Below are positions 3,236 to 44,269 of a stretch of DNA of 64,000 nucleotides, in pieces. Made by a program: the position numbers and the translations under genes. The notes beneath the pieces were generated by a model. That model did no database searches. It saw only the letters and a list, made by a program, of their open reading frames with translations, and was not told the DNA's origin. This DNA is from Octopus bimaculoides (taxonomy: Eukaryota), in NCBI RefSeq assembly GCF_001194135.2, contig NC_068984.1, positions 7,217,382 to 7,281,381 of the forward strand. The letters run 5' to 3'. Each line of letters opens with the position of its first letter. Position 1 is the stretch's first letter.

Positions 3236-3873
3236 AATTGTGACATTCATTATGTGGAACTATGGGTATGGGTGTGTGCAGAGAGAGAGAGAGAGANNNN
3301 NNNNNNNNNNNNNNNNNNNNNNNNNNNNNNNNNNNNNNNNNNNNNNNNNNNNNNNNNNNNNNNNNNNNNNNNNNNNNNNNNNNNNNNNNNNNNNNNNNNN
3401 NNNNNNNNNNNNNNNNNNNNNNNNNNNNNNNNNNNNNNNNNNNNNNNNNNNNNNNNNNNNNNNNNNNNNNNNNNNNNNNNNNNNNNNNNNNNNNNNNNNN
3501 NNNNNNNNNNNNNNNNNNNNNNNNNNNNNNNNNNNNNNNNNNNNNNNNNNNNNNNNNNNNNNNNNNNNNNNNNNNNNNNNNNNNNNNNNNNNNNNNNNNN
3601 NNNNNNNNNNNNNNNNNNNNNNNNNNNNNNNNNNNNNNNNNNNNNNNNNNNNNNNNNNNNNNNNNNNNNNNNNNNNNNNNNNNNNNNNNNNNNNNNNNNN
3701 NNNNNNNNNNNNNNNNNNNNNNNNNNNNNNNNNNNNNNNNNNNNNNNNNNNNNNNNNNNAAAAACCATTTCGTATTCTCCTCACGTCCTGTGCGGAGGCC
3801 GGAGGGTTGTGTTAAAACAGTGAAGTTTCACAAAAAACCACGAGGCGTGATGGATTAACAGGACACACACTCA

Positions 3874-11099: not shown

Positions 11100-11289
11100 T
11101 ATATCGATTTGTAATCTGTCGAAAATGTTCACTTCCACACGGATATCATACATCGATACAACATATCATAATACCTACTTCCTCACAATGTAATATCATA
11201 CCCATTTACCATACAATATCATGTAGTTCCTTCTACACAACATATCTAGCTCCACACCAAAAGACACCCACTTCTTTATAATATGATAT

Positions 11290-11525
11290 CTCTTGCTTGT
11301 TTCAGCCATTAAACCGCGGCCATACTGGAGCACCGCCTTAAGAATTTTTAGTCGAATCAATCAAACCCAGTACTTATTTATTTAAACGAGGATCTTAATC
11401 CAACAGTCTCTTTCCGGAACCGCTACGTTACGGAAACGTAAACACACCAACTCAGGCTGTAAATCGGTGGTGGGAAATAAACACAGATACAAAGATATAC
11501 AAACACACACACACACATACACACA
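11290..11525 (-). mobile_element. SINE family B, 3' half ending in its internal microsatellite
   Basis: TTGTTTCAGCCATT...GCGGCCATACTGGAGCACCGCC...GAACCGCTACGTTACGGAAACGTAAACACACCAAC. Confidence 0.8.
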
Positions 11526-11916: not shown

Positions 11917-12770
11917 NNNNNNNNNNNNNNNNNNNNNNNNNNNNNNNNNNNNNNNNNNNNNNNNNNNNNNNNNNNNNNNNNNNNNNNNNNNNNNNNNNNN
12001 NNNNNNNNNNNNNNNNNNNNNNNNNNNNNNNNNNNNNNNNNNNNNNNNNNNNNNNNNNNNNNNNNNNNNNNNNNNNNNNNNNNNNNNNNNNNNNNNNNNN
12101 NNNNNNNNNNNNNNNNNNNNNNNNNNNNNNNNNNNNNNNNNNNNNNNNNNNNNNNNNNNNNNNNNNNNNNNNNNNNNNNNNNNNNNNNNNNNNNNNNNNN
12201 NNNNNNNNNNNNNNNNNNNNNNNNNNNNNNNNNNNNNNNNNNNNNNNNNNNNNNNNNNNNNNNNNNNNNNNNNNNNNNNNNNNNNNNNNNNNNNNNNNNN
12301 NNNNNNNNNNNNNNNNNNNNNNNNNNNNNNNNNNNNNNNNNNNNNNNNNNNNNNNNNNNNNNNNNNNNNNNNNNNNNNNNNNNNNNNNNNNNNNNNNNNN
12401 NNNNNNNNNNNNNNNNNNNNNNNNNNNNNNNNNNNNNNNNNNNNNNNNNNNNNNNNNNNNNNNNNNNNNNNNNNNNNNNNNNNNNNNNNNNNNNNNNNNN
12501 NNNNNNNNNNNNNNNNNNNNNNNNNNNNNNNNNNNNNNNNNNNNNNNNNNNNNNNNNNNNNNNNNNNNNNNNNNNNNNNNNNNNNNNNNNNNNNNNNNNN
12601 NNNNNNNNNNNNNNNNNNNNNNNNNNNNNNNNNNNNNNNNNNNNNNNNNNNNNNNNNNNNNNNNNNNNNNNNNNNNNNNNNNNNNNNNNNNNNNNNNNNN
12701 NNNNNNNNNNNNNNNNNNNNNNNNNNNNNNNNNNNNNNNNNNNNNNNNNNNNNNNNNNNNNNNNNNNNNN

Positions 12771-13354: not shown

Positions 13355-13483
13355 TTTTCTTTTACTTGTTTCAGTTGTTTGACTGCGGCCATGCTAGAGC
13401 ACCGCCTTTAGTCGAACAGATCGACCCTAGGACTTATTCTTCGTAAGCCTAGTAATTATTCTATCGGTCTCTTTTGCCGAACC
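13355..13483 (-). mobile_element. SINE family B 3' part, followed by (AT)n and a gap
   Basis: TTTACTTGTTTCAGTTGTTTGACTGCGGCCATGCTAGAGCACCGCCTTTAGTCGAACAGATCGACCC. Confidence 0.85.
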
Positions 13484-13521
13484 ACTATGTTATTTTTATA
13501 TGTATATATATACATACATAC

Positions 13522-13552
<31 letters not shown>

Positions 13553-14276
13553 TATATNNNNNNNNNNNNNNNNNNNNNNNNNNNNNNNNNNNNNNNNNNN
13601 NNNNNNNNNNNNNNNNNNNNNNNNNNNNNNNNNNNNNNNNNNNNNNNNNNNNNNNNNNNNNNNNNNNNNNNNNNNNNNNNNNNNNNNNNNNNNNNNNNNN
13701 NNNNNNNNNNNNNNNNNNNNNNNNNNNNNNNNNNNNNNNNNNNNNNNNNNNNNNNNNNNNNNNNNNNNNNNNNNNNNNNNNNNNNNNNNNNNNNNNNNNN
13801 NNNNNNNNNNNNNNNNNNNNNNNNNNNNNNNNNNNNNNNNNNNNNNNNNNNNNNNNNNNNNNNNNNNNNNNNNNNNNNNNNNNNNNNNNNNNNNNNNNNN
13901 NNNNNNNNNNNNNNNNNNNNNNNNNNNNNNNNNNNNNNNNNNNNNNNNNNNNNNNNNNNNNNNNNNNNNNNNNNNNNNNNNNNNNNNNNNNNNNNNNNNN
14001 NNNNNNNNNNNNNNNNNNNNNNNNNNNNNNNNNNNNNNNNNNNNNNNNNNNNNNNNNNNNNNNNNNNNNNNNNNNNNNNNNNNNNNNNNNNNNNNNNNNN
14101 NNNNNNNNNNNNNNNNNNNNNNNNNNNNNNNNNNNNNNNNNNNNNNNNNNNNNNNNNNNNNNNNNNNNNNNNNNNNNNNNNNNNNNNNNNNNNNNNNNNN
14201 NNNNNNNNNNNNNNNNNNNNNNNNNNNNNNNNNNNNNNNNNNNNNNNNNNNNNNNNNNNNNNNNNNNNNNNNNNNN

Positions 14277-14314
<38 letters not shown>

Positions 14315-14604
14315 AAGGGCTTATGGACTTATTTTGTACAAGATCGGAAAGTTGAACCGTGAACTTTTATGCGTCTTTTTTCTTCTTTTTCTTATCTCCT
14401 TATTCCTTCACTCATGTCCTCTATGTCATCATTTCATTAATCTATACCCTTCTCATTTTCCGATGACGGAATATCCCATACTCTGGGATATCCTAGAAAC
14501 AGCAGTAAGACATTGAATTCTTTCCAATAACAATCATGTATATGACTTGAGACGTTTGTTGTCCTCTTTAACAATTATATATGTGTATGTATGCATATAT
14601 GTAT

Positions 14605-14757
14605 ACATACAACTGGCTTCCTTCAATTTCCCTCTACCAAATCTACCTTAGCCTCGAGCCGCGGCTGTAGTAGAGGACATTTGTGCAAAGAGCCACGTGG
14701 GACTGAACACGGAGATAAATGGTTGGGAATCAAACTCTTTACCACACAGCCACGCCC
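14605..14757 (-). mobile_element. SINE family B head
   Basis: CTACCAAATC...GGGACTGAACAC...TTTACCACACAGCCACGCC. Confidence 0.75.
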
Positions 14758-22701: not shown

Positions 22702-22988
22702 ACTCTTTTACTCTTTTACTTGTTTCAGTCATTTGACTGTGGCCATGCTGGAGCACCGCCTTTAGTCGAAGAAATCGACCCCAGAACTTATTCTATCCCT
22801 CTCTTTTTGCCGAACCGCTAAGTTACGGGGACGTANNNNNNNNNNTCTTTCAGTTTCCCTTTACCAAATCCACTCACAAGGCTTTGGTCGGCCCGAGGCT
22901 ATAGTAGAAGACACTCGCCCACGTAGTGGGAATGAACCCAGAACCATGTGGTTAGTAAGCAAGCTACTTACCACACATCCACTCCTGC
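22702..22988 (-). mobile_element. young SINE family B (10-N gap at the internal microsatellite)
   Basis: CTCTTTTACTTGTTTCAGTCATTTGACTGTGGCCATGCTGGAGCACCGCC...CAAGGCTTTGGTCGGCCCGAGG...TACTTACCACACATCCACTCCTGC. Confidence 0.9.
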
Positions 22989-27403: not shown

Positions 27404-28540
27404 AGTCATCGTGTGGCTGTGGTCGCCGTTCCCATTGTCGCCATCAGTATCGCCCTCATCATCACCGCCAGCCTAAACAATAATTTCAACGTCTTCGCCC
27501 TTGTCTCCCAATACGGGACGTTTTCTAAAAAACATCCAGAAAATCATCAGCAGCAGCTACATCAACAACAACAACAATGAAGTAAAATAAAATCGCCATT
27601 CCGATTCCCTTCTTTGCTTATTGAAATCCTGTTGGCAGCAGTTATTGTCAAGAAATAGAGAAATCGATAAGTTATTAGTTATTAAGGATATATAGAATTA
27701 TGGCAAAAAAATGAAAAGTTTGTTTGTAGCAAATATTGTTGGTGGTTGGCATGCTGGGATGCCAAATCGTGCTTTTACATTTAAAATGCGTCTATTACAT
27801 ATTTCATACAAGCACTCCACATATTACGGCTTTGTGTTCGTATTGAAACAAGACTTCTGCAACGATTCTTCCCCCAAAAAATTGAGCGGCGTCCATTGTA
27901 GTTTCAAGCATTGAAAATATTTATTTATTTATTTATCATTTATATTTTATTTTCATTTATATATTTCATTTTTAGTCCTTATACGTTTTTTTCCTCCTGT
28001 TATTTATTTATTTCTCTGTTCTGTGGTTTTAGAAATTATAGAAGATAGTTTCTCTTTTTTTTTCTTTTTTTCGTTAACTAAAATAAATTTGCATGAATCC
28101 GTTATGTTTTGCTGTATTTTAACTAAAGACAATGAGTGATAAAGATATCCGAAAACTGTGTTGATTGGTTGTGCTGTTCGAATCAAAATGAGTTATTGAT
28201 CTCTCTTCTTTTTCTTTCGAAATTTCCCTTCATATTTAAAAAAAAAAGCAAAACTAGAATATTTTTCAGAGCTTAACCAACTGCACATAAAATAAACACC
28301 AACTCAAAAAAATTTAATAAATTATCATTTGAATGTTTCAGTCATAAAAACGTACAGGAACTAAATCTAAGTAGATTGAGAAGAGTTTTCTGAAAGAATG
28401 AAATAAAACAAAACAACAAGGTTTATACCAGTGATTCTCAATCTTTTTAGTATTTAGGCCAGATCCAAAATCTGGATTTTTTTAGGGGGCAGCACCAAAA
28501 AGGTAAAGCACAAGTCAGTTAAAGAAAACTTTTGCATACA

Positions 28541-28950
28541 GGTGCAGGAGTGGCTGTGTGGTAAGTAGCTTGCATACCAACCACATGGTTTTGGGTTCAG
28601 TCCCACTGCGTGGCACCTTGGGCAAGTGTCTTCTATTATAGCCTCGGGTCGACCAAAGCCTTGTGAGTGGATTTGGTTGACGGAAACTGAAAGAAGCCCG
28701 TCGTATATATGTATATGTGTGTATATGTTCGTGTGTCTGTGTTTGTCCCCCCAACATCGCTTGACAACCGATGCTGGTGTGTTTACGCTCTCGTAACTTA
28801 GTGGTTCGGCAAAAGAGGTCGATAGAATAAGTACTAGGTTTACAAAGAATAAGTCCTGGGGTCGATTTGCTCGACTAAAGGCGGTGTTCCAGCATGGCCG
28901 CAGTGAAATGACTGAAACAAGTAAAAGAGTCAAAGAGAGAGTAAAGAGAG
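28541..28950 (+). mobile_element. full-length young SINE family B inserted in the left Tc1 TIR
   Basis: GGTGCAGGAGTGGCTGTGTGGTAAGTAGCTTGC...GGGTTCAGTCCCACTGCGTGGCACCTTGGGCAAGTGTC...GACTGAAACAAGTAAAAGAG tail. Confidence 0.92.
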
Positions 28951-29133
28951 GTTGGATAAAATAATGGAAACAGCGTCATAGCATCATAATTCTGAAATAT
29001 CTATAAAACCGTCAAAAGCTTGTTCATTTTTATGTTTTTTGATTTATCATTAGTGTTGCTTAATATGTTTTGCTAAAATTTCTGTTTCTTTTCAGATATC
29101 ATCAAAAAAAAAAGGAAATTAAAATTCACTAAA

Positions 29134-29993
29134 ATGACAGATCTATCTGCCTTTCAAAGAGGTCAAATTGTTGGTGCTCGAATGCCAGGCGCTAGCGTAA
29201 TGAATACAGCAGAAATGTTTGGTGTATCAAGAAGTACTGTCTCGAAAGTAATGACAGCCTTTGGGAAAAGGGGAAAAAACCTCTTCGTCAAAACAAAACA
29301 CCGGAAGAAAACCAAAACTTTCAGATAGGGACCGTCGGACTCTTACGCGAATTCTTAGAAAGGATCACAAAAGTACAGCTCTCAAAATTACTGCAGAGCT
29401 TAATGACCACCTTGAGAACCTAGTTTCCACAAAAGCTGTTCGCCGGAAGCTGCACAAAGCCGGATTTTAAGGGAGGGCTGAAATCAGAAAACCACTACTT
29501 TCAAAGACAAACGTTGCAAATCGCCTAGAATGGAATAAAAACCTACAGAATTGGTTCTTAGAGCAGTGGAAGAATGTTATTTTCTAGGACGAATCATCCA
29601 TTACCTTATTTCCGACCACCGGCCGAGTATACGTGTGGAGACAGTCCAAAGAACCATTTGACCAAGGCTGCTTTCTTCCAACTGTTAAGCATGGAGGAGG
29701 ATAATGCACCAATTCATACTGCTAAAGTTGTTACTGGATGGCATGAGGAACATTCTAGTGAAGTTGAACATCTTATCTGACCACCACAGTCCCCAGATCT
29801 CAATATTATTGAACATTTATGGTGCATTTTAGAAAAACAGGTAAGGAGTCGATACCTTCTACCATCATCACTACAAGAACTGGAGACTGTTTTAGCTGAA
29901 GAATGGACAAAAATTCTTTTGGAAAAAATTCAAACTTTGTACGAGTCCATACCTCGTAGAATTCAAGCCAAAGGCGGTCCTACCCCATATTAA
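29134..29993 (+). pseudogene. Tc1 transposase pseudogene (paired-like HTH plus DD36E catalytic domain)
   Basis: MTDLSAFQRGQIVGAR...GVSRSTVSKVM, frameshift, GRKPKLSDRDRRTL...RKPLL...F*DES...GRVYVWR...PTVKHGG, deletion, DNAPIHTAK...*PPQSPDLNIIEHLW...SIPRRIQAKGGPTPY*. It has three in-frame stops, two frameshifts and a deletion at about 29699. Confidence 0.92.
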
Positions 29994-30648
29994 AATATAT
30001 TTGTCTGAAATTTTAAGGTGTTTCCATTATTTTGTCCAACACCTGTACTTATGGAGGAAAGACTATCGCGGGTTGCCGGAAGGTTGCTTGAGGGCCACAT
30101 GCAGCCCTGGAACTGCGGTTGACAACCGCAGTTTTATACACACGAACATCAAATCAGAAACAGATGTAGAAAATCGGAAGAATTTAGATACGTTATTAAA
30201 AACTTGTAAAGACTACGAACTGACTGCAGTATGCATGAGCCAAAACAGGACGTTGGAGTGTATGATACAATGTAAATATGGAAAAGATTGGGACCACAAG
30301 GCATCAATGAGAATCACGCTATTTTATAAAACGTTTAGAAGAAAAGATAGCATATCAAGAGATTAATTCGTGATGCTTAAATACATGTGCCTCCATCGGA
30401 ACTTCTGTTCTTTATGTCCGAAGCTGTCTGTGTCCATTTGCTGCTAAACTGAAATTCTAAACTGAAATAGCTTAATTCTTGGTCAAATTATGTGCTGTAT
30501 ATCTCACCAGAAAAAAAGTGGTATTCGAAATCAGGATTAGCAGTCGTCTGAGGGCCTATTGTAGAAAGACTCAGAAACCTGTTGCAAACATATGTATGCA
30601 ATATGTAAAAGGGTTCGAAATCGAATGAATAACCACCTTATAATAAAT

Positions 30649-33891: not shown

Positions 33892-34392
33892 TTCTTTTAT
33901 TCTTTTACTTGTTTCAGTCATTTGACTGCGGCCATGCTGGAGCACCGCCTTCAGTCGAACAAATCGACCCCAGAACTTATCCTTTCTAAGCCTAGTACTT
34001 ATTTTATCGGCCTATTTCGCCGAACCGCTAAGTTACGGAGCGTAAACACACCAACATCAGTTGTCAAGCGATGGTGGGGGGACAAACACAGGCACACAAA
34101 TACATACATATNNNNNNNNNNNNNNNNNNNNNNNNNNNNNNNNNNNNNNNNNNNNNNNNNNNNNNNNNNNNNNNNNNNNNNNNNNNNNNNNNNNNNNNNN
34201 NNNNNNNNNNNNNNNNNNNNNNNNNNNNNNNNNNNNNNNNNNNNNNNNNNNNNNNNNNNNNNNNNNNNNNNNNNNNNNNNNNNNNNNNNNNNNNNNNNNN
34301 NNNNNNATATATATATATATATATATACGACTCAACCCAGGGCCATGTGGATGGGAAGCAAGCCTCTTACCACACAGCCATTCCTTCGCCTA
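33892..34392 (-). mobile_element. SINE family B (gap in internal microsatellite, about 100-bp internal deletion)
   Basis: The tail TTCTTTTACTTGTTTCAGTCATTTGACTGCGGCCATGCTGGAGCACCGCC and the head end CTTACCACACAGCCATTCCTTCGCC are both present. Confidence 0.88.
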
Positions 34393-36519: not shown

Positions 36520-36755
36520 ACTTTCATCTGTTACAATCATTAGGCTCGGCCATGCCGGAGCACCTCATTGAAGGATCTTAGTCGAACGAATGGAGCCCAG
36601 TACATTTTCTTTTTCTTTAGAGTTTGGTACCTCTTCTATCAGTCTCTCTTTTATCGAACAGCTAAGCTGCAGGGATTTAAACACACCAACACCGGTTGTC
36701 GAGCGGTGATGGGGGACAAACACAGACAAAAGGCACACACGAACACACACAAACA

Positions 36756-36797
<42 letters not shown>

Positions 36798-37188
36798 TAC
36801 ACATAACATATACGACGGGTTTCTTTCAGTTTCCATTTACCAGTTGTTGACTGAGATGTACCCAGGTATTGTCAACTTATCTGATATTCCTTGAAGAAGT
36901 TTGTCCAGGTTTCGTTTAAAGGTGATGGGATCTTTTTCTACTTTGATTTCATGTAGGATATTGTAAATAGAACAGGGCCTGTTTCAAAAAGAAATTGTCT
37001 TGCAGTGAATTTGTGTTGTGATCCTGTAGAGGGCGAATGACATGAGGCTCCAGTCTTGGATAAATTCTGAATCGGATGTTAAGGTTGTCTTCGTGCTATA
37101 GAAGAAGGCGGTTGCCCAAGGCGCTATGTAGTGGGATTGAACCCGGAACCATGTTACTGGGAAAAAAACTTCTTTCCACGTAGCCACG
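36520..37188 (-). mobile_element. SINE family B interrupted by an inverted LINE fragment
   Basis: SINE sequence runs to ...TTCTTTCAGTTTCCATTTACCA (36842) and resumes at GCTATAGAAGAAG...GCCCAAGG...TAGCCACG (37095-37188). Confidence 0.85.
36843..37086 (-). mobile_element. CR1/L2-group LINE 3' fragment, inverted copy of about 38085-38338
   Basis: The reverse complement encodes NILHEIKVEKDPITFKRNLDKLLQGISDKLTIPGYISVNN and is roughly 90% identical by eye to the copy near 38.1-38.3 kb. Confidence 0.85.
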
Positions 37189-38723: not shown

Positions 38724-39729
38724 TTTTCGTTGTACACCATTACTAAAGAAAAGAAAGAAAAGATAACGAATCCACACGACTGGGAAATATTTATGGCACT
38801 GGGAAAAGTACTTTAACTGCTATTTCTAAAGTCGGTGCGTAGTGAAGCAATCAACTTACCTCTGATTATAATTATGCTTATAATTGTAGAANNNNNNNNN
38901 NNNNNNNNNNNNNNNNNNNNNNNNNNNNNNNNNNNNNNNNNNNNNNNNNNNNNNNNNNNNNNNNNNNNNNNNNNNNNNNNNNNNNNNNNNNNNNNNNNNN
39001 NNNNNNNNNNNNNNNNNNNNNNNNNNNNNNNNNNNNNNNNNNNNNNNNNNNNNNNNNNNNNNNNNNNNNNNNNNNNNNNNNNNNNNNNNNNNNNNNNNNN
39101 NNNNNNNNNNNNNNNNNNNNNNNNNNNNNNNNNNNNNNNNNNNNNNNNNNNNNNNNNNNNNNNNNNNNNNNNNNNNNNNNNNNNNNNNNNNNNNNNNNNN
39201 NNNNNNNNNNNNNNNNNNNNNNNNNNNNNNNNNNNNNNNNNNNNNNNNNNNNNNNNNNNNNNNNNNNNNNNNNNNNNNNNNNNNNNNNNNNNNNNNNNNN
39301 NNNNNNNNNNNNNNNNNNNNNNNNNNNNNNNNNNNNNNNNNNNNNNNNNNNNNNNNNNNNNNNNNNNNNNNNNNNNNNNNNNNNNNNNNNNNNNNNNNNN
39401 NNNNNNNNNNNNNNNNNNNNNNNNNNNNNNNNNNNNNNNNNNNNNNNNNNNNNNNNNNNNNNNNNNNNNNNNNNNNNNNNNNNNNNNNNNNNNNNNNNNN
39501 NNNNNNNNNNNNNNNNNNNNNNNNNNNNNNNNNNNNNNNNNNNNNNNNNNNNNNNNNNNNNNNNNNNNNNNNNNNNNNNNNNNNNNNNNNNNNNNNNNNN
39601 NNNNNNNNNNNNNNNNNNNNNNNNNNNNNNNNNNNNNNNNNNNNNNNNNNNNNNNNNNNNNNTGCTCAAAATAATTGAGCACTCAATATAAGTTCAGTTA
39701 TATATTCTTTTAGAATATTACTTATAAAA

Positions 39730-43124: not shown

Positions 43125-43753
43125 NNNNNNNNNNNNNNNNNNNNNNNNNNNNNNNNNNNNNNNNNATGTGTGTTTGGGTGTGTGTGTGTGTTAGGTTGAT
43201 CACCAGTTGCATTGTCAGGTCGCCGATAATCCAAACGGTTGCGCTCATCGGACTTCTTTGGCAGAGAGGTTTGACAGAAACCCGAAAGGAAACAACAGCA
43301 AAAGAAGTGTTGTATCTTTTTCGTAGAATAGCAATGACCGTAGAATTGCATAAATGAACGAGTGTGCCTCTATGTAGTTTCCCATCCAGCTAGAAATAAT
43401 AGCCAACTTTCTCACAAATGTCACCCAACATTCTTAGGGTTTCACTGGTTAATGTAACGTCTGAAAACAAAATAATGAAATGCTTTAAATCTAATATGAT
43501 AAAATTTTCTTTTTCAGTGAACACCGATACATTGGGGTCCCTACGTATCGCAGGGCAGTTGTTGTCGTCTGACAATTATTGTTCTGCCATAAGTTTTATT
43601 ATAAAGGCTGCGAGCTGGCAGTTTGTTTGATACAAAGGAATTTATATCAGTTAATATATTTTCACTGCGAGAATGATTCGAAGGGTAAAACAATGAAACA
43701 GCTGTACAGAGTTTCATGTTGCATCGTGGAAATATTATTGGTTGATTTTAAGA

Positions 43754-44165
43754 AATGTTAGCACGCCGGGCGAAACACTTAGCGGCATTTCGCCTGTCTT
43801 TGTGTTCTGAGCTCAAATTCCGTTCAAAGGTCGACTTTGCCTTTCATCCTTTCGGGGTTTATGAATTAAATACCAGTTGCGTACTGGGGTCGATCTAATC
43901 GAGTGGTCCCCTCCCCAAAAATTTCGGGCCTTGTGTCTAGAGTAGAAGAGTAAAGGCGATGAGCTAGCAGAAACATTAGCACGCCGGGCGAAATGCTTAG
44001 CGGTATTTCGTCTGTCTTTACGTTCTGAGTTCAAATTCCGCCGAGGTCGACTTTGCCTTTTATCCTTTCGGGGTCGATAAATTAAATACCAGTTGCATAC
44101 TAGGATCGATCTAATCGACTAGCCCTCTCCCCAAAAATTTCGTGTCTTGTACCTAGAGTAGTAGA
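43754..44165 (+). mobile_element. head-to-tail pair of SINE family A
   Basis: Two copies of about 200 bp (43754-43950, 43955-44165). Each has TTAGCACGCCGGGCGAAA...GGTCGACTTTGCCTTT.ATCCTTTCGGGGT and ends TAGAGTAG(A/T)AGAG. Confidence 0.92.
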
Positions 44166-44269
44166 GTTATTTTTATCATAACCTCACTGGTAGGATGAAA
44201 GATTAAGAAAGCTTTTATCAACCTCCCAGCTGTATTTCGAACTCGCATTTCGAAATCGCAGCGAAAGTG

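What the first reader, a model, noticed from the sequence alone, without database searches (positions are those of the whole stretch)
28539..30045. Tc1 transposon with DD36E spacing (Incomer-like) in an apparent cephalopod genome
Seen: from the second catalytic Asp (GAT at 29700, DNAP) to the Glu of NIIEHLW there are exactly 36 codons in one frame (NAPIHTAKVVTGWHEEHSSEVEHLI*PPQSPDLNII), not the canonical 34. The TIR is about 29 bp, and the element is about 1.1 kb without the SINE and with an internal deletion. Established: DD36E defines the Incomer family of Tc1/mariner, described mainly from fish, frogs and bats plus a few arthropods, with horizontal transfer proposed. Inference: if the host is an octopus, this copy may extend the family to molluscs and is a horizontal-transfer candidate.
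Basis: partly seen in the sequence, partly recalled or inferred. Interest (0 to 1): 0.75.

Follow-up and report, generated by a model that had tools for sequence, protein, structure and literature searches.

The report
Dead DD36E Tc1 transposon, octopus-type
This is a broken, long-dead copy of a Tc1-type 'jumping gene' whose enzyme has an unusual 36-residue spacing in its active site; it belongs to a lineage beside the known Incomer family, found here in octopus-type DNA and spread between animal phyla by horizontal transfer. That is a useful new host record for transposon specialists, but ordinary biology.

Summary
Window 28539-30045 is a Tc1/mariner element flanked by a TA duplication. Its short inverted ends are split by a 407-bp SINE-like insert. 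Exactly 36 codons separate the second catalytic Asp (29700) from the Glu (29811).

The spacing is not private to this copy. It is present in 66 of 75 measurable homologues. A four-copy consensus, which includes a full-length Octopus sinensis chromosomal copy, restores an intact 343-aa DD36E reading frame in a 1,273-bp element.

The window copy cannot move on its own. It carries one frameshift, three stop codons, a 159-bp deletion inside the catalytic core and an interrupted left end.

In my neighbour-joining trees the element sits in a strongly supported clade (90-100% bootstrap). That clade also holds copies from spiders, a mantis shrimp, an amphipod, a nematode, an ant, a pike and a poison frog. 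It is sister to the published Incomer clusters, not inside them. Support for one common DD36E clade is only moderate (84.5%, 18% and 62% in three data sets).

The octopus-type consensus is 79-80% identical in DNA, ends included, to the shrimp and frog copies. That fits horizontal transfer, not vertical descent.

Verdict: a new host record and a probable new cluster of a known kind. Interest is modest.

The parts
28537..28538 (.). Left TA target-site duplication
   Evidence: Read directly. It matches the TA at 30046-30047. The O. sinensis and Dendrobates copies are flanked by TA as well.
28539..28544 (+). First 6 nt of the left inverted end (CAGGTG), cut off from the rest by the insert
   Evidence: Alignment with the right end and with the full-length O. 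sinensis copy.
28545..28951 (+). 407-bp SINE-like interspersed repeat inserted into the left end (a secondary event)
   Evidence: Absent from all related copies. At least 10 related fragments lie elsewhere in the window, and one lies in the O. sinensis flank L003:2425-2671. ARAGORN and Rfam find no tRNA in it.
28952..28975 (+). Remainder of the left inverted end (TTGGATAAAATAATGGAAAC...)
   Evidence: the repeat finder I2, 22 nt at 95% complementarity; alignment.
28976..29133 (+). 5' untranslated region
   Evidence: Aligns with the same region of L003 and L001. The consensus of this region is 72-74% identical to the shrimp and frog copies.
29134..29279 (+). Reading-frame piece A (frame of 29134): start codon and first helix-turn-helix. 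It ends at a 1-bp insertion in the A/G runs at about 29266-29279.
   Evidence: Translation; extra base relative to L003, L004, L001 and L002; weak Pfam HTH_23 and HTH_32 matches.
29280..29699 (+). Reading-frame piece B (frame of 29135): HTH_Tnp_Tc3_2 domain and the start of the catalytic domain. Stops at 29468-29470 (TAA) and 29585-29587 (TAG). First catalytic Asp at 29588-29590. Ends at KHGGG.
   Evidence: Translation; Pfam PF01498 E=7e-13.
29699..29700 (+). Junction of a 159-bp (53-codon) internal deletion that removes most of the stretch between the two catalytic Asp residues. AGGAT/GGAT microhomology sits at both edges in intact copies.
   Evidence: DNA alignment with L003, L004, L001 and L002. 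The D1-D2 distance is 37 residues here against 90 in relatives.
29700..29993 (+). Reading-frame piece C (frame of 29136): second catalytic Asp at 29700-29702, TGA in place of Trp at 29778-29780, catalytic Glu at 29811-29813 (36 codons between D and E), 12-bp deletion at 29966/29967, natural stop at 29991-29993.
   Evidence: Translation; Pfam DDE_3 E=1e-10; alignment.
30017..30045 (-). Right inverted end (reverse complement CAGGTGTTGGACAAAATAATGGAAACACC)
   Evidence: Nearly identical ends occur in the O. sinensis, Oratosquilla and Dendrobates copies.
30046..30047 (.). Right TA target-site duplication
   Evidence: Read directly.

Best explanation
Window 28539-30045 is a dead copy of a cut-and-paste DNA transposon of the Tc1/mariner superfamily with a DD36E catalytic triad.

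When intact, the element is about 1.27 kb long. It has roughly 30-bp inverted ends (CAGGGGTTGGACAAAATAATGGAAAC...) and one intron-free gene for a 343-aa transposase. The transposase has paired helix-turn-helix DNA-binding domains and an RNase-H-like DDE domain. By analogy with Tc1, Tc3, Mos1 and Sleeping Beauty, it would bind the ends, excise the element and reinsert it at a TA, which becomes duplicated. That mechanism is inferred from homology and was not tested here.

This copy inserted at a TA and then decayed. It gained a 1-bp frameshift and three stop codons. It lost 159 bp from the catalytic core and 12 bp near the C-terminus. A SINE-like repeat then landed inside its left end. It can neither make a transposase nor, probably, be mobilised by one made elsewhere.

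The element belongs to a distinct, well-supported DD36E clade that is sister to the described Incomer (DD36E/IC) clusters. Both share the two-residue insertion at the same place (EH-x-x-E-[FV]...WPPQSPD). The clade occurs patchily in cephalopod, arachnid, crustacean, nematode, insect, fish and frog genomes, at about 80-85% nucleotide identity. The best explanation is repeated horizontal transfer followed by bursts of copying and decay within each genome.
For: Structure of the element.

The 36-residue spacing is shared. 66 of 75 measurable hits have it, as do 47 of 158 sequences in the large alignment.

A four-copy consensus restores an intact 343-aa DD36E frame in a 1,273-bp element.

A full-length copy with a TA duplication lies in O. 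sinensis CM016861.1, inside an intron of a Peptidase_S28 gene. It is 88% identical to the window copy.

Trees (neighbour-joining, Kimura protein distance, own script):
- The window clade gets 99%, 90% and 100% bootstrap.
- The published Incomer references form a clade at 95.5% in the small DDE set. In the 157-sequence DDE set the Incomer-side clade (published references plus IC-type representatives) gets 59-69%. In the full-length set, which has IC-type representatives only, that group gets 89%.
- All DNAP/DNAR-type DD36E sequences form one clade in every best tree, at 84.5% (54 sequences), 18% (157 sequences, DDE domain only) and 62% (125 full-length sequences).
- The two insertion columns were removed from the distance matrices of the two larger data sets. 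In the small set they were kept, but gapped positions are skipped in each pairwise distance. So agreement between tree and indel is independent evidence.

Profile test: an HMM of the window clade scores the published Incomer domains at 182 bits, the nearest non-36 lineages at 160 and all DD34E at 142.

Cross-phylum identity: consensus against the Oratosquilla copy 79.8% over 1,267 nt; against the Dendrobates copy 78.6%; shrimp against frog 85.0%; the ends are nearly identical. The non-coding 5' region is 72-74% identical.

dN=0.088 and dS=1.03 against the intact relative P0001. This shows purifying selection on the transposase while the lineage was active.
Against: Support for a single DD36E clade is weak with dense sampling of the DDE domain alone (18%).

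Mean DDE-domain identity of the window clade to published Incomer (45%) barely exceeds its identity to DD34E lineages (43%). The window clade scores about equally against the Incomer and DD34E profiles (196 against 200 bits).

The end sequence differs from the fish Incomer ends (CACTCACCGGCCACTTTATTAGG...).

The D2-E loop changes length often. Spacings of 32, 35, 38 and 40 occur among close relatives, and P0169 shows 36 arising independently.

Only neighbour-joining trees could be built. The consensus rests on four copies, two of them from metagenome assemblies of unknown host. The window's own host is not proven. No host-gene dS was computed, so horizontal transfer rests on the established expectation that neutral sites are saturated between phyla.
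Confidence: 0.8

Rival explanations
1. It is an ordinary Tc1 (DD34E-lineage) element whose D2-E loop gained two residues independently of Incomer. On this reading the DD36E match is convergent and the clade is a separate, unrelated offshoot of DD34E/Tc1.
For: The loop changes length repeatedly among close relatives (32, 35, 38, 40). P0169 carries 36 on a DNDPKH-type background far from both clades. Bivalve TLEWI elements are a further DD36E group. Support for the joint clade is only 18% in the dense DDE tree. The window clade keeps the DD34E-like TVKHGGGSVM motif where Incomer has TVQAGGG. The end sequences differ.
Against: All three best trees still join the two groups, and only them, although the indel contributed nothing to the distances between DD36E and shorter-loop sequences. 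The insertion is at the same place and has a similar sequence: EHSSEV-EHL-WPPQSPDLNIIEH against the Xenocatantops Incomer EHSSEF-KHL-WPPNSPDMNIIEH. The reciprocal profile score favours Incomer over the nearest DD34E lineages (182 against 160 bits). Both groups share an N-terminal DLSDF-RG-VGAR motif.
Confidence: 0.17
2. The element was inherited vertically from an ancient bilaterian DD36E transposon and kept in many phyla. No horizontal transfer was involved.
For: dS to the nearest intact relative is already about 1.0, so the split is not recent. The clade is taxonomically broad.
Against: Identity is 79-85% over the whole element, including the non-coding 5' region and both ends, between a mollusc-type consensus, a crustacean and an amphibian. 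Those lineages split more than 500 million years ago (established knowledge). Individual copies decay neutrally: the window copy is already 12% from a copy in O. sinensis. The distribution is patchy, with one frog, one pike and one nematode among the named hits.
Confidence: 0.03

Closest known systems
Incomer (DD36E/IC), Tc1/mariner superfamily (Sang et al. 2019, PMC6875036)
   Same: DD36E spacing with the two extra residues at the same place in the D2-E loop. About 1.2-1.3 kb long. A single intron-free frame of about 343-346 aa. Inverted ends of 22-32 bp. TA duplication. Sister position in all my trees. Patchy distribution with evidence of horizontal transfer. Deletion derivatives exist (bat MITEs there; L007 and L008 here).
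   Different: It lies outside the four published clusters, as a separate clade (90-100% bootstrap). DDE-domain identity to them is only about 45%. It has TVKHGGGSVM and DNAPIHTA motifs where Incomer has TVQAGGG and DNAPCHKA. The end sequence differs. In the papers I could search, Incomer hosts are fish, frogs, bats, hagfish, insects (bees included) and arachnids; none is a mollusc.
Canonical Tc1-like DD34E elements (Tc1, Sleeping Beauty, Passport, Frog Prince, Quetzal)
   Same: Same domain architecture (paired HTH plus DDE_3), the same TA target and cut-and-paste logic, a similar size, and the TVKHGGG and SPDLN-IE motifs.
   Different: 36 rather than 34 residues between the second Asp and the Glu. 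The element falls outside all sampled DD34E lineages in the trees.
TLEWI (Tc1-like elements with introns, DD36E, pteriomorph bivalves; bioRxiv 10.1101/656579)
   Same: A Tc1-like transposase with DD36E spacing in a mollusc.
   Different: TLEWI elements have spliceosomal introns, no inverted ends, low copy number and a YQDNDSKH motif, and were reported absent from cephalopods. This element has ends, a continuous reading frame and an FQDDNAPIH motif.
Intruder (DD38E) and Traveler (DD35E)
   Same: Sibling Tc1-like families defined by a length change in the same loop and known for horizontal transfer.
   Different: The loop length and sequence differ. DD38E and DD35E representatives fall elsewhere in the trees.

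Membership tests
Incomer (DD36E/IC) | 36 residues between the second catalytic Asp and the Glu | tested here: met
   Window copy: 29700 to 29811. Also met in 66 of 75 measurable homologues and in the four-copy consensus.
Incomer (DD36E/IC) | Element of about 1.2 kb with one frame of about 346 aa (range 335-382) | tested here: met
   The consensus is 1,273 bp with a 343-aa intact frame. Intact relatives P0001-P0008 are 343-346 aa. The window copy itself is truncated and broken.
Incomer (DD36E/IC) | Short inverted ends (22-32 bp) and a TA target-site duplication | tested here: met
   Ends of about 27-30 bp and TA on both sides. The end sequence is unlike that of the fish Incomer elements, but end sequence is not a stated criterion.
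Incomer (DD36E/IC) | Falls within the monophyletic Incomer clade in a tree of the DDE domain | tested here: inconclusive
   It is sister to the published Incomer references, not nested among them. The joint clade appears in all three neighbour-joining trees, with bootstrap 84.5%, 18% and 62%. The profile test places it between the Incomer and DD34E profiles.
Tc1/mariner superfamily | Paired helix-turn-helix DNA-binding region plus a DDE catalytic domain, inverted ends, TA duplication | tested here: met
   Pfam PF01498 E=7e-13 and PF13358 E=1e-10. All three catalytic codons are present (29588, 29700, 29811). Ends and TA.
DD34E/Tc1 family in the strict sense | 34 residues between the second Asp and the Glu | tested here: not met
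   36 in this copy and throughout its clade.
TLEWI (bivalve DD36E) | Spliceosomal introns in the transposase gene, no inverted ends, YQDNDSKH motif | tested here: not met
   The consensus and P0001 have a continuous frame. Inverted ends are present. The motif is FQDDNAPIH.

The most novel reading that the evidence does not exclude
The element represents an unnamed DD36E family or cluster, sister to Incomer, that has moved horizontally among at least five animal phyla or classes: cephalopod, arachnid, malacostracan, nematode, amphibian/teleost. It would be the first Incomer-lineage transposon recorded in Mollusca. Its consensus is intact, so it could be resurrected as an active transposase.
Probability: 0.45. 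Interest if true: 0.4.

Novelty: new member of a known kind. Interest (0 to 1): 0.3.

Why it matters
It adds cephalopods to the host range of the DD36E (Incomer-lineage) Tc1 transposons. It also points to a well-supported sister cluster that earlier surveys, seeded with the toad Incomer, seem to have missed.

The roughly 80% nucleotide identity between octopus-type, mantis shrimp and poison frog copies is one more clear case of transposon transfer between phyla, involving marine invertebrates.

Practically, the copy is a neutral marker. Its SINE insertion and deletions could be used as presence/absence characters among octopods. It has no functional consequence for the host locus that I can see.

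Tried and rejected
- Rfam scan of the region: only a mir-2843 match far below threshold (E=0.26) inside the insert, which I treat as chance.
- ARAGORN on the insert: no tRNA, so a tRNA-derived head could not be shown.
- Other copies of the element in the window: none.
- Whether the flanks form an older inverted-repeat element into which this one inserted: the score was no better than shuffles, so rejected. The flanks are unique in the window.
- Finding the window's source by exact look-up of a window ORF: nothing on record. The window has no obvious coding exon to use instead.
- Literature searches for DD36E or Incomer in cephalopods or molluscs: only the bivalve TLEWI preprint turned up. A search for DD34E with cephalopod terms returned nothing relevant, and one query was malformed.
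- Domestication was considered and rejected, because the frame is broken.
- Contamination or misassembly was considered and rejected. The copy is interrupted by a repeat that is interspersed through the window, and the O. sinensis copy sits in an intron on a chromosome-scale scaffold.
Full report
WHAT IS THERE

Window 28539-30045 is bounded by TA at 28537-28538 and at 30046-30047. The right end reads, in reverse complement, CAGGTGTTGGACAAAATAATGGAAACACC. The left end is the same motif split in two. CAGGTG lies at 28539-28544 and TTGGATAAAATAATGGAAAC starts at 28952. Between them sits a 407-bp insert (28545-28951).

The repeat finder reports the inner 22 nt as 95% complementary. The 28-nt end motif has no chance matches in shuffled sequence. 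The insert is an interspersed SINE-like repeat. At least ten related fragments lie elsewhere in the window, and one lies next to the Octopus sinensis copy. ARAGORN and Rfam find no tRNA in it.

THE CODING REGION

The three forward frames together spell a Tc1-type transposase.
- Frame 1 runs from the ATG at 29134 to a 1-bp insertion at about 29266-29279.
- Frame 2 runs to 29699, with stops at 29468 (TAA) and 29585 (TAG). The first catalytic Asp is at 29588.
- Frame 3 runs from 29700 to the natural stop at 29991. The second Asp is at 29700, a TGA at 29778 replaces a Trp, and the Glu is at 29811.

Pfam finds HTH_Tnp_Tc3_2 (E=7e-13) and DDE_3 (E=1e-10). Compared with every related copy, 159 bp (53 codons) are missing between KHGGG and DNAP, with AGGAT microhomology at the edges. 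Another 12 bp are missing at 29966/29967. This copy is dead.

IS THE SPACING PRIVATE TO THIS COPY? NO.

A protein search returned 215 homologues. Of the 120 listed, 75 span the loop, and 66 of those have 36 residues between D and E. The exceptions are more distant DD34E or DD35E proteins and two decayed copies. Intact 343-346-aa relatives (P0001-P0008) read DNAPIHTA..W.EEH..E.EHL.WPPQSPDLNIIEHLW.

I then fetched DNA for related copies:
- a full-length copy in O. sinensis (GCA_006345805.1, CM016861.1; L003:3187-4467), flanked by TA and lying in an intron of a Peptidase_S28 gene;
- two ENA metagenome contigs (L001, L004);
- a Logan contig that encodes the intact P0001 (L002).

A majority consensus of the window, L003, L004 and L001 gives a 1,273-bp element with 30-bp ends (one mismatch) and an uninterrupted 343-aa DD36E frame. 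The window copy is 93.4% identical to that consensus and 88.2% to the O. sinensis copy.

IS IT INCOMER?

I took the DDE-domain alignment from the Incomer paper (PMC6875036, supplement 4). It supplied 13 Incomer references and DD34E, DD34D, DD37D and DD41D references. I added my hits and later 105 unbiased representatives from a HMMER scan of 1.84 billion proteins. Only neighbour-joining with Kimura distances and bootstrapping was available (own scripts).

Small set (54 sequences):
- window clade 99%;
- published Incomer 95.5%;
- the two together 84.5%.

Large DDE-only set (157 sequences):
- window clade 90%;
- the Incomer-side clade (published references plus the IC-type representatives) 59-69%;
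- every DNAP/DNAR-type DD36E sequence falls in one clade in the best tree, but with only 18% bootstrap.

Full-length set (125 sequences, 342 columns):
- window clade 100%;
- Incomer-type representatives 89%;
- joint DD36E clade 62%.

The two insertion columns were dropped from the two larger matrices because most sequences have gaps there. In the small set they stayed in, but gapped positions are skipped in each pairwise distance. So the exact match between the tree clade and the indel is independent support.

A profile test agrees. An HMM of the window clade scores the published Incomer domains (182 bits) above the nearest non-36 lineages (160) and above DD34E overall (142). The window clade scores about equally on the Incomer and DD34E profiles, whereas true DD34E neighbours strongly prefer the latter.

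Evidence against strict membership:
- DDE-domain identity to Incomer is only about 45%, against 43% to DD34E.
- The motifs differ: TVKHGGGSVM and DNAPIHTA here, TVQAGGG and DNAPCHKA in Incomer.
- The fish Incomer ends (CACTCACCGGCCACTTTATTAGG) differ from CAGGGGTTGGACAAAATAATGG.

My reading is that this is a distinct cluster, sister to the described Incomer clusters. That makes it Incomer in a broad sense, not one of the published groups.

Spacing alone is a weak criterion. P0169 has 36 on an unrelated DNDPKH background. Spacings of 32, 35, 38 and 40 occur among near relatives. The TLEWI preprint makes the same point and describes a different DD36E group in bivalves, one with introns and without inverted ends.

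HORIZONTAL TRANSFER

Named members of the window clade include the following:
- spiders: Trichonephila, Araneus, Parasteatoda;
- the mantis shrimp Oratosquilla oratoria;
- the amphipod Trinorchestia;
- the nematode Strongyloides venezuelensis;
- the ant Harpegnathos;
- the pike Esox lucius;
- the poison frog Dendrobates tinctorius.

I fetched the shrimp and frog loci. The octopus-type consensus aligns end to end with the shrimp copy at 79.8% (1,267 nt) and with the frog copy at 78.6%. Shrimp against frog is 85.0%. The ends are almost identical, and the frog copy has a TA duplication. The non-coding 5' region is 72-74% identical.

Against the intact P0001 gene, dN=0.088 and dS=1.03 (Nei-Gojobori). 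These hosts separated more than 500 million years ago, and single copies decay neutrally. This level of identity therefore does not fit vertical descent. A dS near 1 also means the transfers are not recent, and no donor can be named. I could not compute host-gene dS.

HOST

The window is a gap-rich, microsatellite-rich draft with no evident exon. An exact look-up of a window ORF found nothing. An octopod origin is inferred from two things: the 88% match to the O. sinensis copy, and the SINE-like repeat shared with that locus. It is not proven.

LITERATURE

In the searchable library, Incomer is reported from fish, frogs, bats, hagfish, insects (later bees as well) and arachnids. I found no report from cephalopods or other molluscs. 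Subscription journals are not covered, so priority cannot be excluded.

VERDICT

The thing itself is an ordinary dead transposon. Its modest value is as a new host record, as a probable new sister cluster of Incomer, and as a further example of cross-phylum transfer.

Noticed in passing
window 28545-28951; related fragments at 22703-22987, 13358-13492, 33893-34108, 34329-34385, 61027-61151, 11289-11511, 14594-14756, 36521-36842; L003:2425-2671: A roughly 400-bp SINE-like interspersed repeat is frequent in the window and also lies beside the O. sinensis copy (75% identity). Its head has no detectable tRNA fold. It may belong to the cephalopod SINE families, but this was not tested.
   Followed up: partly
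L007:9823-10416 and L008:9898-10415 (ENA ERZ21867824): Two copies of a roughly 600-bp internally deleted derivative share the same junction (consensus position 548 joined to 1212). This suggests a MITE-like non-autonomous form that amplified in an unidentified host. The octopus SINE is absent from 20 kb of flanks.
   Followed up: partly
L006:13750-14960 (Dendrobates tinctorius JAYMGB010000220.1): The frog copy lies within the CASTOR1 gene. NCBI's predicted 'isoform X1' (P0073) joins CASTOR1 exons to the N-terminal half of the transposase. This is either an annotation artefact or an exonised transposon.
   Followed up: no
P0076 (Strongyloides venezuelensis) against P0007: A parasitic nematode carries a decayed protein that looks very similar by eye to the metagenome-derived P0007 of the same clade (identity not computed). 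This is another patchy host for the family.
   Followed up: no
P0169 (representative library): A DNDPKH-type Tc1 transposase also has 36 residues between D and E but falls far from both DD36E clades. The spacing has arisen more than once.
   Followed up: partly
window 43751-44167: A 216-bp unit is present as 1.9 tandem copies (85% match). Its sequence looks like another SINE-like repeat.
   Followed up: no
window-wide (e.g. 3300-3760, 11930-12770, 13560-14290, 38880-39660, 59720-60640): Many runs of N are flanked by TA, CA or GA microsatellites, which is typical of a short-read scaffolded draft assembly. No convincing protein-coding exon was seen among ORFs of 110 aa or more.
   Followed up: no
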